A DNA stretch of 64,000 bases, from positions 41,230,001 through 41,294,000 of the forward strand of contig OZ241832.1 in NCBI GenBank assembly GCA_965202585.1, read 5' to 3'. This DNA comes from Thalia democratica. Taxonomy: Eukaryota. Positions 19,273 to 24,958 of this stretch are shown here, piece after piece. The stretch's first letter is position 1, and each line of letters starts with the position of its first letter. The notes below the pieces were generated by a model, which saw only the letters and a list, made by a program, of their open reading frames with translations, did no database searches and was not told where the DNA came from. The position numbers and the translations under genes were made by a program.

Positions 19273-19468
19273 TTTAAATTGTAAAAAATTACAATATAAA
19301 GTCTGTCTTTATACTAATTTTTAAAATCTTAAAAGATTCAAGCAGAGTAAATTTTACAGCATGAAGTCGTTACAAGTCGAAAAACAGAAACCATGGTTAA
19401 ACAATTAAATCTTTTAGTATGGTGATTAGTGATGCTTGCTATCAACAGTTTATTAAAAAGTATATCCT

Positions 19469-20328
19469 TATCTTTCGCACGTTGCTTGTGGTTGGTCTGA
19501 TGGACCAGGTTGGCTACGGCGCGAAGAGTGTGGGTCAACACCCCTTTTGTTGATCCCTCTGTCAATGGTACGCTGGCTACAGCGAGTTTCGGGGTTGTTG
19601 ACCTTGTCTAAAGTATGATGTATGTTCTCTTTAGAGAACATACTATCCTTTTTGGGGGGCTTGGATCTATTACTCATTATGCTATACCAAGAGTTAGGTG
19701 TGGCCCACTAGTTGTTTAATTAAATTTAGATATTTTAGATATTTAGATATTTTAGATATTTAGATATTTAAATTAATTAAATTTGATTTGTAAATTTCAG
19801 AGATTATTAAGAGCACCAAAAGCAGCTTGCTTCTTAATTAATTATCCACAACAAAGCTTATTTATTCATTTTTATGTAACCAAATTACAGATAATTTCAA
19901 TATAATTAACTATTAACACCAAAGTTTATTTATTTAAATTTATGTAAAATCCAAAGTACAATTAACTTCAATTTAATTTTATCAACAGCAGAGTTTATTT
20001 ATTCAAATTTATGCAAACCAAAAGTACAATTAACTTCAATTTAATTTTATCAACAGCAGAGTTTAGTTATTCAAATTTATGCAAACCACAGTAAAATTAA
20101 CTTCAATTTAACTTTATTAGAAATTTCCATTTTAAGAGACAGAACTAGAAAATAAGAGATTAATGACAATACTCACAATTTAGCACATAGGAAGTTCAGC
20201 TTGAGCCTTTACAAATCTAATCATTCAAATCTAAGGCGGCAATTTAGAAAGTTAACAAATTAATACAAAAAACCCCTAATTAGAGAAAACTCTTTTGCTG
20301 AATTTAATTTAAAGCCAGAGGCGTTACA
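19469..20328 (-). repeat. 3' LTR
   Basis: Direct repeat of 23611-24469; starts TGTAACGCC on the minus strand; internal (TTTAGATAT)n array and ~60-bp tandem subrepeats. Confidence 0.93.
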
Positions 20329-20340
20329 TTTTCCCCTCTT
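20329..20340 (-). promoter_or_regulatory. Polypurine tract
   Basis: AAGAGGGGAAAA immediately before the TG of the 3' LTR. Confidence 0.85.
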
Positions 20341-20909
20341 ATTAAACATTTTTAGAATTTTAACTTAGGTTTTTTTAGATAAATATTAGTTTTAAGGTGT
20401 TAAACGTTTGTTAAACTGAAAAAAACTTTAAATATAGTCAAGGTTAAAACCATTATACACTAGAGCACTCAACTTAGAGATATATAAGCATGCAACATAA
20501 GTTTATAACTTTCTTTTTGTAATTTACATGTAATAAACAGAAATAATATTTTAAGAGATACTTATGATCATCAACTTTATGTGCTAAAACGTACTTGCAT
20601 ATAACAACATTTTTGAGCTAATTCAAAATCTGGATTTAAACACTCTACTAGCTATTTTTAAAGTAAAATTAAAACTATAAGTATTTAAATGTAGTAAATG
20701 CTTAAGACACTTTTTAAGTGTGGTAAAAATGCTTTTTTTAACAAAATAAAAAAGAAATTCTAAAGAAATTGTAAAGAAAAGACTTTTTTAAAATATAAAT
20801 TTACAAGTTCCTAATTACAATCATGAGTCAAAAGCTTGTTTAAAAGTCAGTGTTTACCGTTCATGATGATGATTCCTTACTCTTACACTGGAGGTTGAGG
20901 CTCGGCCTC

Positions 20910-21158
20910 TTCTTACTCGCCTTCTCCTCCTCTTCTCTGGTTGCTCCAGCTGCGGCCGCTCTTCTTGTAGCGGTTCTCCCGGAACTCTGGCGGGAAGTTT
21001 GGCTCCACTGACGTCCTTCTTCGCGAATTAATCGCTGGCGACCTGGCGTTGTTCACCATCGTCATCAACGCCAACGGATTTGAGGGTCTGCTTGACATCA
21101 TCAGCAGACGGGTTGGCATTGCCCCATGGCATCCGAAGGTGTGCTGCCATGTATGCAT
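20910..21158 (-). pseudogene. RPLP2: Degenerate 60S acidic ribosomal protein P2 sequence inside the LTR element
   Basis: A frame absent from the ORF track reads AYMAAHLRMPWGNANPSADDVKQTLKSVGVDDDGEQRQVASD*FAKKDVSGAKLPARVPG, then after a frameshift AAAGATREEEEKASKK. It aligns by eye to P2 ([47 protein letters not shown]...KLASVP...AAAEEKK). Confidence 0.8.
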
Positions 21159-21645
21159 TTCCAGACGAATCAACATCGTCACTACAATTCTGCTGTACAT
21201 AGTGGCAGCCTGTTCTTATTAGAATGGTTCATTCTGAGGTCTCTGGGGTGTGGCAGTTCGACTTACCCCACCAAACTAGATGAGTGAAAGTTATTGAGCC
21301 ATGATTTTTACAATTTGCTTGGCAAGCTTTCCCAGTGCTAAACAGGAGACAACCAAAACTCAATGCAATATAGAAAATTTTAGATTTTTATATAAAATAT
21401 CACACAGTACCTATTTTAGCTAAGATAATTACAAAAAAAATACATGTCTATAAGATACCAATTTTTAATGGTTGTACAAATAAATATAAAATCAAAAACC
21501 CCATTAATTTTAAAATTAAAAAAATTCTTAAAGTTTAGTCATTTAACAGTAATATAAACAATGCAAGCAGCTTCCAGGTGTTGTACAAAATAATCAGTGA
21601 AAATCAACTGTTGCTTATTTGAATAAGCCCTTAAGTAGTATTCAT

Positions 21646-23046
21646 CTAAAAAGTACCAAATATCTTTCTATGCTTGTACAAAAAAACACCAGGTCTCCTG
21701 GCTTTGACCATGGCAGGCTTGTAATTATCCAATATTATCTCGAGCTCGTAGTTGTGTTTTGGCTTTGCGTGGTAGGTTGGCTTCCTGGTAATTTCAGGGA
21801 AGTCCATTAATAGTCTTTTGCATTTTTCTTCTAACGGAGTCGTATTCTTACCACCCAGATTGATGTGGTTGACTGAAGCGACTATAGGGGTGGGCAACTC
21901 AGCAGGTGCGAACAGTCTAGCTGATTCGTTTGACCCCATCTTGCATAGTTGAGAGGTAGATGGCAGGATCGCTAGTTTGTTCTTTCTTAACAGGTCCATG
22001 CCAATAATGCCAAAGTGGCGTGATTCTTGAATAACCCAGAACGAGTGGTTGATGGGTTCTAAATTCCCCAATTGAAGTTCGACATCCGCGCTACCAATAG
22101 GGTGGGTTGTTTTGTTACCAAACCCTTGGATGGTTCTACTTTGTTTAGGAAAATATTTGTCTATACCGTTAGTCAATTCCTTCGGCAGGATTGAAATTTC
22201 GGATCCGCTGTCAACCAAAAAGATAACATTTGTGTTTGAATCCGCTAAAAATAGTAGGCCCTGAGGGTAGTTCTTCGGTTTGGGTGCAGGGAATTTATTC
22301 AGTTGAAATGTCCATTTTTCTACACTTTTATCTTTATTGTGATTGGTAGTGTCGAGAGATTTTTGTTGTGGTTCTGGCTGCGGTTGCGCTGACCGTTGGG
22401 ACTGCCCGTTGTGGTGCTGGCTAAGGTGGCTCGGATCGTTGGCGCTTGTCGTGGAGGTGCTGGCTAAGGTGGCGCTGACCGTTGACGCTGGCCCTGGTGA
22501 TGCTGGCTGTGTTTGCGCTGACCGTTGGGACTGCCCGTTGTGGTGCTGGCTAAGGTAGCTCGGATCGTTGGCGCTTGTCGTGGAGGTGCTGGCTTCGGTG
22601 GCGCTGACCGTTGACGCTGGCCCTGGTGATGCTGGCTGTGTTTGCGCAGACCGTTGGGACTGCCCGTTGTGGTGCTGACTAAGGTAGCTCGGATCGTTGG
22701 CGCTTGTCGTGGAGGTGCTGGCTTCGGTGGCGCTGACCGTTGACGCTGGCCCTGGTGATGCTGGCTGCGGTTGCTCAGAACTTTGGTTCTCATCAGGTGT
22801 TTCTGCTGCACTACGTGAGGCTGTTTGCTTTATATGAAAAGTCATCTTCGGTTTGTTTGAAGGTGTGGACACTTCATTTCCTGGATGACTTATAGTGCAG
22901 TTTGAGGCATTTCTGGTTGATCTCGGTTGAGATGGGGGTTGCTGTCGAGGGGCGGTTTTATTTACAAACTGGACAGCTTGGGTGTGAGATAGTGTAGCCC
23001 CAATCACTCTCCCTCTCACTGCGGAGAGTTTGGGAGCTCGTTTTTT
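21646..23046 (-). CDS. Retroelement ORF2: S/T/Q-rich repeats plus retropepsin aspartic protease; pol truncated; probably reached by -1 frameshift
   Basis: FLVDSGSEISILP active site, flap IQGFGN, and GIIGMDLL. KHNYELEIILDNYKPAMVKARR resembles the pre-RT linker, after which similarity stops. Confidence 0.85.
   Translation of the reverse strand, partial: KKRAPKLSAVRGRVIGATLSHTQAVQFVNKTAPRQQPPSQPRSTRNASNCTISHPGNEVSTPSNKPKMTFHIKQTASRSAAETPDENQSSEQPQPASPGPASTVSATEASTSTTSANDPSYLSQHHNGQSQRSAQTQPASPGPASTVSATEASTSTTSANDPSYLSQHHNGQSQRSAQTQPASPGPASTVSATLASTSTTSANDPSHLSQHHNGQSQRSAQPQPEPQQKSLDTTNHNKDKSVEKWTFQLNKFPAPKPKNYPQGLLFLADSNTNVIFLVDSGSEISILPKELTNGIDKYFPKQSRTIQGFGNKTTHPIGSADVELQLGNLEPINHSFWVIQESRHFGIIGMDLLRKNKLAILPSTSQLCKMGSNESARLFAPAELPTPIVASVNHINLGGKNTTPLEEKCKRLLMDFPEITRKPTYHAKPKHNYELEIILDNYKPAMVKARRPGVFLYKHRKIFGTF
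22381..22767 (-). repeat. Three tandem 129-bp (43-aa) in-frame repeats in ORF2
   Basis: QPASPGPASTVSATEASTSTTSANDPSYLSQHHNGQSQRSAQT x3, nearly identical. Confidence 0.95.
22999..23046 (-). promoter_or_regulatory. -1 programmed ribosomal frameshift signal
   Basis: A AAA AAC heptamer (23046-23040) in correct phase near the end of ORF1, 5-nt spacer, then hairpin CCCAA-ACTCTCC / GGAGAGT-(GA)-TTGGG. ORF2 is in the -1 frame. Confidence 0.8.
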
Positions 23047-23819
23047 GCATGAGGCGGAGATATCACCTGGCTCCTTGGTAGGTCTTGAGCCTTTGAGGTG
23101 TGTGAAACCTGGTGGGTAACCTGGATTTGAGGATCCATGTATGTATTCTGTCTAACCTGAGTTGAGATGTCGTGATTTGTCCTTGTGGATGGATTTAGAC
23201 TTCTCAATTCATGTAATTCTTCTTGTAATTTTCGAAATTCCTCTAGAAGTTTAGCCCGTCGAATTTGTTCCTTCAAATCTTTGATCCCCTGTACTAACTC
23301 CTCGGCACCCAGTTCTTGAGGTGGCACTTGAATAGGGGGTCTCCTGTTGTTTTGGAGGGAATAGTCCATGTTTAAGTGGTTAGGTTGGAGTTGCTGTTGG
23401 AGTGGCAAGGGTGAGGTTCTTGCTGGAGGAATGGAGCTGTTGCTAGGTGGTCCTGTCACCCTTGGTGGAGGCCCATAGTTGCTAGGTGTAGAATTTTGTT
23501 GGGGTGGGTAGCTTTGTCTTGGCAGACCACTTGGATTAGGCTGGTCTCTAGGTTGTTGATAACTGCCCATTGCTGCCTGGAGTTCTTCCTCCATCACGTC
23601 CGGGTCACCATATCTTTCACGCGTAGGGTGTGGTTGGTCTGATGGACCAGGTTGGCTACGGCGCGAAGAGTGTGGGTCAACACCCCTTTTGTTGATCCCT
23701 CTGTCAATGGTACGCTGGCTACAGCGAGTTTCGGGGTTGTTGACCTTGTCTAAAGTATGATGTATGTTCTCTTTAGAGAACATACTATCCTTTTTGGGGG
23801 GCTTGGATCTATTACTCAT
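23016..23819 (-). CDS. Retroelement ORF1 (gag position), P/Q-rich with a coiled coil
   Basis: 267-codon ORF that starts in the 5' LTR and reads through the PBS; heptad segment EELVQGIKDLKEQIRR...LQEELHEL; no recognisable capsid or CCHC motif. Confidence 0.7.
   Translation of the reverse strand: MSNRSKPPKKDSMFSKENIHHTLDKVNNPETRCSQRTIDRGINKRGVDPHSSRRSQPGPSDQPHPTRERYGDPDVMEEELQAAMGSYQQPRDQPNPSGLPRQSYPPQQNSTPSNYGPPPRVTGPPSNSSIPPARTSPLPLQQQLQPNHLNMDYSLQNNRRPPIQVPPQELGAEELVQGIKDLKEQIRRAKLLEEFRKLQEELHELRSLNPSTRTNHDISTQVRQNTYMDPQIQVTHQVSHTSKAQDLPRSQVISPPHAKNELPNSPQ
23593..23610 (-). promoter_or_regulatory. Primer binding site for tRNA-Trp
   Basis: TGGTGACCCGGACGTGAT directly after the 5' LTR; matches the complement of the vertebrate tRNA-Trp 3' end as I recall it (TGGTGACCCCGACGTGAT) at 17/18. 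Confidence 0.85.
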
Positions 23820-24469
23820 TATGCTATACCAAGAGTTAGGTGTGGCCCACTAGTTATTTAATTAAATTTAGATATTTTAGATATTTAGATATTTTAGATA
23901 TTTAGATATTTAAATTAATTAAATTTGATTTGTAAATTTCAGAGATTATTAAGAGCACCAAAAGCAGCTTGCTTCTTAATTAATTATCCACAACAAAGCT
24001 TATTTATTCATTTTTATGTAACCAAATTACAGATAATTTCAATATAATTAACTATTAACACCAAAGTTTATTTATTTAAATTTATGTAAAATCAAAAGTA
24101 CAATTAACTTCAATTTAATTTTATCAACAGCAGAGTTTATTTATTCAAATTTATGCAAACCAAAAGTACAATTAACTTCAATTTAATTTTATCAACAGCA
24201 GAGTTTAGTTATTCAAATTTATGCAAACCACAGTAAAATTAACTTCAATTTAACTTTATTAGAAATTTCAATTTAAGAGACAGAACTAGAAAATAAGAGA
24301 TTAATGACAATACTCACAATTTAGCACATAGGAAGTTCAGCTTGAGCCTTTACAAATCTAATCATTCAAATCTAAGGCGGCAATTTAGAAAGTTAACAAA
24401 TTAATACAAAAAACCCCTAATTAGAGAAAACTCTTTTGCTGAATTTAATTTAAAGCCAGAGGCGTTACA
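23611..24469 (-). repeat. 5' LTR
   Basis: Near-identical to 19469-20328: about 3 scattered substitutions, 1 indel, and one 10-nt divergent patch. Confidence 0.93.
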
Positions 24470-24958
24470 TCCTTTCTTTACTTTCGTTTTCTTAGACCAT
24501 GCTAAAAACTGTATCTATATAAAGTATTTTTTTATTTTATGTATAAGTGAAATTATCTTAAACTATTTTTACAAACTCTTAACTAAGTTATAACTTTTTA
24601 ATAATGATATTGCTTGAACACAGTATTAAGTTGAAGTCAAAACAATTCGTCTGAAGTAAAATTTTGCTTATTTATTTAATATTAAAATGGTATAAAAATC
24701 ATTAACTTAATATCTTAAAGCAGTGTTATTTTTCAATAAACATAGATAAATAACTGGCTAGTAAATATTTAGAGTTATATATTAATTGATTTAAACTCTA
24801 TTTTATACTTAGTAAAAAGGACTACATTTAGTTTAAAAAAAAATCCCCAGCATTCGGATGAAAATTAATTTGAAAAATAAGTTAAATCCTGTTGACGGGT
24901 ATTCTTAATCATAAACATAATGCTTTTTGCCAAGCCTGCTCCATACCTTACTTTATAC

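What the first reader, a model, noticed from the sequence alone, without database searches (positions are those of the whole stretch)
20910..21158. Ribosomal stalk protein P2 sequence carried inside the LTR element
Seen: a GC-rich island between the truncated pol and the PPT, on the element strand, reads GNANPSADDVKQTLKSVGVDDDGEQ...KDVSGAKL..VPG and then AAAGATREEEEK. That is 12/22 identity by eye to human P2 [22 protein letters not shown]. The relic has a damaged start, a TAA at 21030-21028, a deletion, a frameshift and no DMGFGLF tail, yet the LTRs are almost identical. Established: LTR elements can capture host mRNA by template switching, and P2 forms the ribosomal stalk. Inference: the capture is much older than this insertion, so an active non-autonomous family has been propagating host cargo, possibly as a source of sense/antisense small RNA against a translation gene or of a new product.
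Basis: partly seen in the sequence, partly recalled or inferred. Interest (0 to 1): 0.85.

Follow-up and report, generated by a model that had tools for sequence, protein, structure and literature searches.

The report
Dead ribosomal P2 retrocopy riding retrotransposon
A jumping gene of the Ty3/gypsy type in this marine animal's genome carries, just after its polymerase gene, a long-dead spliced copy of the host's ribosomal stalk protein P2 message; about 140 copies of the element hold it as passive baggage, which is a clean example of a known kind of gene capture and not a new mechanism.

Summary
Window 21166-20784 (minus strand) is an intronless copy of the host RPLP2 mRNA: a stub of 5'UTR, the whole coding sequence and 3'UTR-like sequence. 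It is 79% identical to the spliced coding sequence of the host gene on contig C5, and both coding introns are absent. It is a fossil. A 1-nt loss follows the ATG, there is a TAA at 21030-21028 and a 15-nt deletion, further frameshifts follow, and the acidic tail is decayed. Differences from the host gene are spread evenly over codon positions, which indicates neutral decay.

About 142 copies in the genome carry the relic, and nearly all share the same TAA. Sixteen long copies also carry it 0.64-0.9 kb after integrase, and eight of these have unbroken polymerase frames of 1348-1415 aa (protease, RT, RNase H, integrase). The window copy is a 2.7-kb deletion derivative of that parent.

Related elements, in this genome and in marine metagenomes, lack the relic, so there was one capture in one lineage, long before this insertion (LTRs 98.8% alike). 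RNA libraries hold the relic.

I found no sign of a function. Two other first-stage notes of this scan flag the same relic on other DNA of this genome.

The parts
24470..24473 (-). Target-site duplication AGGA, 5' side
   Evidence: Read from the sequence. The same 4 nt follow the 3' LTR.
23611..24469 (-). 5' LTR (859 bp, starts TGTAACG, ends GAAAGATA)
   Evidence: blastn of the two LTR regions: 98.8% over 864 columns, 9 mismatches and 1 gap; sequence
23593..23610 (-). Primer-binding site TGGTGACCCGGACGTGAT directly after the 5' LTR
   Evidence: Read from the sequence. It starts with TGG as expected for a tRNA 3' end. The tRNA was not identified.
23016..23819 (-). Gag-position ORF (267 aa), starting inside the LTR and reading through the PBS
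   Evidence: the ORF listing. No significant Pfam family.
21646..23019 (-). Truncated pol ORF (457 aa): 43-aa repeats, aspartyl protease (about 21970-22236) and the first residues of RT
   Evidence: the ORF listing. Pfam Asp_protease_2 E 1e-6, above its cut-off. Long copies continue past residue 191 of the query 22260-21649.
21687..21688 (-). Internal deletion breakpoint: about 2.7 kb (RT, RNase H, integrase) is missing relative to long copies
   Evidence: Long copies match only residues 1-191 of the 204-aa query. DNA similarity to relatives L076 and L077 ends at element position 2783. The distance from protease to relic is 1137 bp here, against 3866-3882 bp in long copies.
21167..21686 (-). 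Spacer between the pol remnant and the relic (AT-rich, then a GC-richer 130 nt of unknown origin)
   Evidence: Composition. No similarity to the host RPLP2 flanks or to relic-free relatives.
20853..21166 (-). RPLP2 relic: 8 nt of 5'UTR (GTCTGGAA), then the whole spliced coding sequence from ATG 21158-21156 to the stop-equivalent 20855-20853. Exon 1/2 junction is near 21006, exon 2/3 junction near 20950.
   Evidence: Alignment to the spliced host coding sequence: 79% over 252 nt, no intron sequence at either junction. The 5'UTR stub is shared with the host's processed pseudogene L039.
21028..21030 (-). Premature TAA inside the relic, shared by the family
   Evidence: TAA in 50 of 54 aligned copies; the other 4 have a 27-nt deletion over it. 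'1 TAA' in nearly all relic hits.
20784..20852 (-). 3'UTR-like stretch (AATTAGG ... ATTTATATT, as in the host 3'UTR) ending in an A6 run (20789-20784)
   Evidence: Alignment; sequences side by side. Suggestive only: short and AT-rich.
20341..20783 (-). AT-rich spacer between the relic and the polypurine tract
   Evidence: no ORFs, no matches
20329..20340 (-). Polypurine tract AAGAGGGGAAAA
   Evidence: Read from the sequence, directly before the 3' LTR
19469..20328 (-). 3' LTR (860 bp)
19465..19468 (-). Target-site duplication AGGA, 3' side
   Evidence: Read from the sequence

Best explanation
Window 21166-20784 (minus strand) is a fossil retrocopy of the host's own RPLP2 mRNA. It lies in the 3' non-coding region of a Ty3/gypsy-type LTR retrotransposon, between pol and the polypurine tract.

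Shown:
- It is a spliced, near full-length copy of the gene at G000:C5:34437070-34438180.
- It lies in the sense orientation of the element.
- It is inactivated by lesions that almost all copies share.
- It is carried both by long copies with unbroken protease-RT-RNaseH-integrase frames and by their far more numerous internal-deletion derivatives, of which the window copy is one. There are about 142 copies in all.
- Related elements lack it.
- RNA libraries contain it.

Inferred:
- It was acquired once. The most likely route is that reverse transcriptase switched from the element's RNA to a co-packaged RPLP2 mRNA and back during minus-strand synthesis (LTR-mediated retroposition).
- Because it landed outside the reading frames, the element stayed autonomous.
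- The cargo then decayed neutrally while being copied along with every retrotransposition.
- It has no function of its own. It is transcribed only as part of the element's RNA.
For: Origin from the host gene:
- 76% over 166 nt, E 2e-26.
- 79% over the spliced coding sequence, with both junctions bridged and no intron sequence.
- The second host paralogue (L036) is much less similar.

Neutral decay:
- Mismatch rates at codon positions 1, 2 and 3 are 0.21, 0.19 and 0.23.
- There is a TAA, a 15-nt deletion and frameshifts.

Propagation:
- A 39-mer of the relic occurs 142 times with at most 3 mismatches, and 0 times for the reversed control.
- The exon-1 protein search gives 145 hits: 2 genes, 1 pseudogene and about 142 relics, nearly all with the same TAA.
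- 40 scored DNA hits are 98-99% identical.

Presence in the autonomous parent:
- Protease hits with open frames of 1348-1415 aa and integrase hits in the same frames lie 3.87-4.1 kb and 0.64-0.9 kb upstream of exact relic 39-mers on the same strand. Examples are C7:23147756/23149358/23151625, C5:61676785/61678390/61680658 and C2:35248294/35249899/35252176.

Domain order:
- The relative P0004 shows protease, RVT_1, RT_RNaseH, Integrase_H2C2 and rve in that order. P0002 and the two genes called on L076 agree with it.

Single lineage:
- Relatives in the genome lack the relic (C2:105983584, C1:7596730, C6:43493326, C5:29397414: no hit).
- Metagenome contigs L076, L078 and L079 lack it within 0.7-1.9 kb after pol.

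Age:
- LTRs are 98.8% identical, against 21% divergence between relic and host gene.

Transcription:
- RNA runs X18, X20 and X19 hold 65%, 42% and 32% of the relic's sampled words; they come from two studies.

No separate constraint:
- Diversity in the relic is 1.22% (0.73-1.93), against 1.33% in the protease and 1.6-2.0% in the AT spacers.
- RNA folding z-score is -0.95 and there is no Rfam match.

Mechanism:
- It is known from yeast, plants and animals (PMC5131818).
Against: - The capture mechanism itself is not shown. The junctions are eroded and no 'empty' relative could be aligned across the site, so microsimilarity at the switch points could not be examined.
- The copy is nearly full-length and is followed by an A6 run. 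That looks more like a LINE-type processed pseudogene than the partial copies typical of template switching.
The presence of the relic in autonomous copies therefore rests on coordinates of hits, not on a read-through of one sequence.
- Relic diversity is at the low end of the element's non-coding parts, so weak constraint cannot be excluded with copies this young.
- The RNA evidence comes from assembled contigs of metatranscriptomes and cannot show strand, ends or level. Read laying was lost to a filter error.
Confidence: 0.85

Rival explanations
1. Nested processed pseudogene. A LINE-type (target-primed) retrocopy of RPLP2 mRNA happened to insert into the 3' non-coding region of one ancestral element copy. 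That copy remained active and founded the present family. In this reading the cargo was not captured by the element's own reverse transcriptase.
For: - The relic is nearly full-length: a 5'UTR stub, the whole coding sequence and 3'UTR-like sequence, ending in an A6 run at 20789-20784.
- The host genome makes ordinary RPLP2 processed pseudogenes. L039 is 91% identical to the coding sequence, is intronless, and lies outside any recognisable element.
- No pol sequence appears to have been replaced, unlike the cases in PMC5131818.
Against: - No target-site duplication is recognisable around the relic. Only GTCT recurs, which is at chance level.
- A6 is unremarkable in a genome of about 25% G+C.
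- The sense orientation is required for template switching but is only a 50% expectation for a random insertion.
- By other first-stage notes, several LTR families of this genome carry host cDNAs (not tested here), which favours an element-driven route.
Confidence: 0.25
2. The cargo was captured in another species, and the element arrived here by horizontal transfer with the relic already on board.
For: - Runs labelled with four different organism codes, and many marine metagenomes, hold the relic.
- The relic is 21% diverged from the host gene.
Against: - The differences are spread evenly over codon positions. A foreign orthologue would differ mainly at third positions.
- The relic shares the host-specific string PSADDVKQ.L.SVGVD with the paralogue L037 and not with L036.
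- The organism codes may stand for close relatives or for mixed samples.
Confidence: 0.07
3. The relic is kept because it does something. It might be a source of antisense small RNAs that touch RPLP2 mRNA, a cis-acting GC-rich RNA element of the retrotransposon, or a 40-aa peptide (ORF 21150-21028).
For: - It is transcribed.
- One 26-nt stretch differs from the host mRNA at only 2 positions, and a 17-nt run is identical.
- Diversity in the relic (1.22%) is slightly below that of the AT spacers.
- It has survived in every one of about 142 copies.
Against: - The confidence intervals of diversity overlap those of all other parts.
- There is no folding signal (z -0.95) and no Rfam family.
- Four copies have lost 27 nt of it.
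- Retention in all copies is expected for passive cargo in a family only 1-2% diverged.
- Decay from the host gene is even over codon positions.
Confidence: 0.05

Closest known systems
LTR-mediated retroposition / chimeric retrocopies inside LTR retrotransposons (Tan et al. 2016, Genome Res 26:1663, PMC5131818; yeast Ty1, maize Bs1, rice cases cited there)
   Same: An intronless copy of a host mRNA sits between the LTRs on the element's strand, is co-transcribed with the element, and is spread further by secondary rounds of retrotransposition.
   Different: In the cases described there, the retrocopy replaces part of the internal reading frames and the product is non-autonomous and usually single or low copy. 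Here the cargo sits behind an unbroken pol, so the autonomous lineage itself carries it. It has reached about 142 copies, and it is near full-length, not partial. Microsimilarity at the junctions could not be examined.
Rous sarcoma virus with v-src between env and the 3' LTR
   Same: A host-derived spliced gene is carried downstream of the last viral gene without loss of the replication genes.
   Different: v-src is intact, expressed and selected. The P2 relic is dead and shows no sign of selection. The carrier here is an endogenous Ty3/gypsy element without a recognisable env.
Ordinary processed pseudogenes of ribosomal protein genes
   Same: An intronless, decayed copy of a highly expressed ribosomal protein mRNA. 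The same genome has a free-standing one (L039, 91% to the coding sequence).
   Different: This one is embedded in a mobile element and is therefore multiplied about 140-fold. No target-site duplication or long A-tail is visible.

Membership tests
LTR-retrotransposon-borne retrocopy (LTR-mediated retroposition) | Intronless copy of a host gene whose genomic copy has introns | tested here: met
   The host gene L037 has coding exons 1453-1624, 1808-1885 and 2487-2563. The relic bridges both junctions without intron sequence.
LTR-retrotransposon-borne retrocopy (LTR-mediated retroposition) | Located between the two LTRs of one element, in the element's sense orientation | tested here: met
   LTRs at 24469-23611 and 20328-19469 with TSD AGGA. 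The relic at 21166-20784 is on the same (minus) strand as gag and pol.
LTR-retrotransposon-borne retrocopy (LTR-mediated retroposition) | Secondary retroposition: the same chimera at many loci | tested here: met
   142 loci with the relic 39-mer and 0 for the control. 40 of 40 scored DNA hits are 98-99% identical.
LTR-retrotransposon-borne retrocopy (LTR-mediated retroposition) | Short microsimilarity between mRNA and element at both fusion points | not testable with these tools
   The junctions are eroded. The full host 5'UTR is unknown. No relic-free relative aligns across the 3' region.
LTR-retrotransposon-borne retrocopy (LTR-mediated retroposition) | Retrocopy replaces part of the element's internal ORFs | tested here: not met
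   Long copies keep unbroken 1348-1415-aa frames that hold protease and integrase, with the relic 0.64-0.9 kb further downstream. Whether non-coding element sequence was replaced is unknown.
Ribosomal_60s (P1/P2 stalk proteins, PF00428) as a working protein | Open frame with the N-terminal dimerisation domain and the acidic C-terminal tail ...DDDMGFGLFD | tested here: not met
   No Pfam hit on the relic ORFs. The PF00428 genome scan finds the host genes but none of the relic copies. There is a TAA, frameshifts and a decayed tail.
Ty3/gypsy (Metaviridae-type) LTR retrotransposon | pol order protease - RT - RNase H - integrase | tested here: met
   The window copy has the protease only. The relative P0004 shows the full order; P0002 and the two genes called on L076 agree with it. 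Long copies of the family match the L076 integrase ORF at 83-86% in the same frame as the protease.
Ty3/gypsy (Metaviridae-type) LTR retrotransposon | LTRs, PBS after the 5' LTR, PPT before the 3' LTR, short target-site duplication | tested here: met
   859/860-bp LTRs, PBS TGGTGACCCGGACGTGAT, PPT AAGAGGGGAAAA, TSD AGGA.
LINE-type processed pseudogene | Poly(A) tail and flanking target-site duplication of the retrocopy itself | tested here: inconclusive
   Only an A6 run follows the 3'UTR-like part, and no flanking repeat longer than 4 nt is present. Both could have eroded.

The most novel reading that the evidence does not exclude
The P2 relic is not mere baggage. As part of an abundant, transcribed element present in both orientations across the genome, it feeds piRNA-type small RNAs that are near-complementary to RPLP2 mRNA (2 mismatches in 26 nt). 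This would couple transposon silencing to a ribosomal stalk gene. Alternatively, the GC-rich island serves the element's own RNA, for example in export or packaging.
Probability: 0.04. Interest if true: 0.6.

Novelty: new member of a known kind. Interest (0 to 1): 0.3.

Why it matters
This is a tidy natural example, from a little-studied marine zooplankton genome, of a host mRNA picked up by an LTR retrotransposon and multiplied about 140-fold. The unusual point is that the autonomous element itself carries the cargo behind an intact pol, not a crippled derivative. It is useful in three ways. It is a dated marker for the history of this element family: relic-bearing against relic-free lineages, with the shared TAA as a synapomorphy. 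It is a caution for gene annotation, because about 140 false RPLP2-like hits lie in the genome. And it is one data point for the apparent frequency of cDNA capture by LTR elements in this genome. It does not open a new mechanism, and nothing points to an effect on the ribosome.

Tried and rejected
- Pfam on the relic ORFs gave no hit. The PF00428 scan of the genome found the host P0/P1/P2 genes but not the relics. The identification therefore rests on the host gene comparison.
I replaced this by cross-matching the coordinates of three independent searches.
- L017 and L025 looked like candidates for long copies, but they are other deletion variants.
There are therefore no strand, depth or end data for the RNA.
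- Flanks of the relic against the flanks of the host gene and of the pseudogene L039 gave no similarity above shuffles. The origin of the GC-richer 130 nt before the relic (21299-21167) remains unknown.
- Metagenome contigs of relatives (L076-L079) were fetched in the hope of an autonomous relic-bearing copy or an alignable empty site. They are relic-free, and their 3' regions do not align with the window's.
- RNA structure and Rfam on the relic and element gave nothing.
- A tRNA scan of the window, to name the primer tRNA, found none.
- A literature search for P2 together with retrotransposon capture returned nothing relevant.
- Chance similarity is rejected (E 2e-26; z about 15 for the exon 2-3 part).
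- A present-day coding function is rejected (shared stop and frameshifts; even codon-position decay).

Full report
**1. What is at the coordinates**

The stretch is a GC island (about 50% G+C) in a genome of about 25% G+C. Pfam does not recognise the pieces, so I tested the claim against the host's own genes.

**2. The host genes**

A scan of the whole assembly (801 Mb, 1833 contigs) with PF00428 finds the P0/P1/P2 genes. Two are P2-type. One is L037 (G000:C5, about 34437070-34438180). It has three coding exons (L037:1453-1624, 1808-1885, 2487-2563), canonical splice sites and a 108-aa product that ends SDDDMGFDLFG. The other is a more distant paralogue, L036, also on C5. A third locus, L039 on C7, is an ordinary intronless, frameshifted processed pseudogene, 91% identical to the L037 coding sequence.

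**3. The relic is a spliced copy of L037**

- blastn of window 21340-20850 against L037 gives 76% over 166 nt, E 2e-26.
- A local alignment with the spliced L037 coding sequence runs from the ATG (window 21158) through both exon junctions to the stop-equivalent (20855-20853). It is 79% identical over 252 aligned nt (exon 1 79%, exon 2 76%, exon 3 84%), and there is no intron sequence at either junction.
- The part that matches exons 2 and 3 alone scores 70, against 20.3 +/- 3.2 for shuffles.
- Eight nt before the ATG (GTCTGGAA) match the 5'UTR seen in the pseudogene L039 (GTCTGAAA), but not the intron that precedes the ATG exon in the gene.
- After the stop, the motifs AATTAGG and ATTTATATT of the host 3'UTR recur, followed by A6 (20789-20784). 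These end features are short and only suggestive.
- The lesions are a 1-nt loss right after the ATG, a 2-nt loss, the TAA at 21030-21028, a 15-nt deletion, a 4-nt deletion, further small indels, and a tail decayed beyond recognition as protein.
- Mismatches to the host gene are equally frequent at codon positions 1, 2 and 3 (0.21, 0.19, 0.23). This is the pattern of a sequence that started out like today's host gene and then drifted without coding constraint. It is not the pattern of a foreign orthologue or of a once-selected gene.

**4. The carrier**

- The relic lies in a 5001-bp LTR element on the minus strand (19469-24469).
- The LTRs are 859/860 bp and 98.8% identical. The target duplication is AGGA. 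The PBS is TGGTGACCCGGACGTGAT and the PPT is AAGAGGGGAAAA.
- There is a gag-position ORF without a recognisable domain.
- A 457-aa ORF follows, with 43-aa repeats, an aspartyl protease (Pfam) and the first residues of RT.
- Relatives found in the protein library show the order protease, RVT_1, RT_RNaseH, Integrase_H2C2, rve, which is the Ty3/gypsy arrangement.

**5. How many copies, and which kind**

- A 39-mer of the relic occurs 142 times with at most 3 mismatches. The reversed control occurs 0 times.
- A protein search with host exon 1 returns 145 places: two genes, the pseudogene and about 142 relics, nearly all with the same single TAA.
- The 40 scored DNA hits are 98-99% identical over 490 nt.
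- In 54 aligned copies, the TAA is present in 50. The other four have a 27-nt deletion over it.

The decisive point comes from cross-matching coordinates.

- Protease hits that stop matching at residue 191 of my 204-aa query have open frames of 1348-1415 aa.
- The integrase ORF of the relative L076 hits the same frames at 83-86% identity.
- An exact relic 39-mer or an exon-1 hit lies 0.64-0.9 kb downstream of the integrase on the same strand. Examples are C7:23147756 / 23149358-23150974 / 23151625, C5:61676785 / 61678390-61680006 / 61680658, and C2:35248294 / 35249899-35251515 / 35252176.
- Sixteen integrase-bearing copies show this layout, and eight of them have unbroken frames.

The relic is therefore part of the autonomous element's 3' non-coding region. 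The window copy, like most of the family, is a 2.7-kb internal deletion. The protease-to-relic distance is 1137 bp here, against about 3870 bp in long copies, and the breakpoint is at about 21688.

**6. One lineage only, and old**

Related elements in this genome have no exon-1 hit nearby, even though all 145 candidates were scored. These are C2:105983584, C1:7596730, C6:43493326 and C5:29397414, with integrase 77-83% identical to L076. Three Tara Oceans contigs of relatives (L076, L078, L079) have no relic in the 0.7-1.9 kb that follow pol.

More diverged copies do carry a relic with the TAA, some of them slightly closer to the host gene. Examples are C6:49837162 with the relic at C6:49838888, C1:56732216 with C1:56729035, and C5:55526657 with C5:55525708. 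Their protease matches the window copy at 75-81%.

The relic is 21% diverged from its source. The two LTRs of this copy differ by 1.2%, and family diversity is 1-2%.

**7. Function**

- Nucleotide diversity in the relic (1.22%, bootstrap 0.73-1.93) is not separable from the protease (1.33%) or the AT spacers (1.6-2.0%).
- The RNA fold is unremarkable (z -0.95) and Rfam is silent.
- RNA libraries from two studies hold 32-65% of the relic's sampled words. It is therefore transcribed, most simply as part of the element's genomic RNA.
- The longest exact run shared with the host mRNA is 17 nt. The best 26-nt stretch has 2 mismatches. Small-RNA cross-talk is conceivable but unsupported.

**8. Mechanism and comparison**

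The best-documented route is LTR-mediated retroposition. Reverse transcriptase switches from the element's RNA to a co-packaged mRNA and back, and the chimera can then retrotranspose again (PMC5131818). This case shares four features with that route: intron loss, sense orientation, co-transcription and secondary spread. It differs in that no reading frame was replaced, the carrier stayed autonomous, and the copy is near full-length.

The last point, together with the A6 run, keeps a rival alive: a LINE-type processed pseudogene that landed in an ancestral copy (about 25%). I could not examine microsimilarity or an empty site.

**9. Context from the scan**

Other first-stage notes flag the same relic elsewhere in this genome (s1-301178, s1-271289). 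Further notes, three of them followed up, report other host cDNAs in LTR elements here: Y-box, SR protein and histones. I did not test those. One follow-up note guesses a pelagic tunicate. My only related data are that marine metagenomes hold the element.

**10. Verdict**

This is a new member of a known kind, of modest interest.

Noticed in passing
window 22325-22786 (minus strand), inside the pol ORF upstream of the protease: A 43-nt tandem repeat lies here. Because 43 is not a multiple of 3, it is read in all three phases and yields a 43-aa (129-nt) protein repeat rich in S, T, P and Q. Copy number varies between element copies: open frames of 501, 544, 587, 630 and 673 aa step by exactly 43 aa.
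   Followed up: partly
window 23016-23819 (minus strand): The gag-position ORF starts at an ATG inside the 5' LTR and reads through the primer-binding site. It has no recognisable capsid or zinc-knuckle domain. The pol frame overlaps its end in the -1 frame.
   Followed up: partly
G000:C7:15783767 and 15787808; G000:C4:44546048 and 44550817: Pairs of relic copies on the same strand lie 4041 and 4769 bp apart. That is about one element length minus one LTR, which suggests tandem elements that share an LTR.
   Followed up: no
L039 = G000:C7:43194658-43197735 (P2 part about 43196150-43196420, minus strand): A free-standing processed pseudogene of the same RPLP2 gene. It is 91% identical to the spliced coding sequence, with deletions and stops. 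It has no evident A-tail and no LTR element around it.
   Followed up: partly
L036/L041 (G000:C5 about 3126446-3129628) and L037/L042 (G000:C5 about 34437070-34438180): The host has two intact-looking P2 paralogues on the same contig, only 63% identical in exon 1. The relic derives from the second one.
   Followed up: partly
window 21299-21167 (minus strand): About 130 nt of GC-richer sequence lie directly upstream of the relic. They match neither the host RPLP2 flanks nor the relic-free relatives. They could be a second captured fragment or the element's own sequence.
   Followed up: partly
(sequencing runs): The best DNA holders of this element are marine metagenomes from several studies, plus runs under four different coded organism labels. 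The family, or its host, is widespread in marine plankton samples.
   Followed up: no
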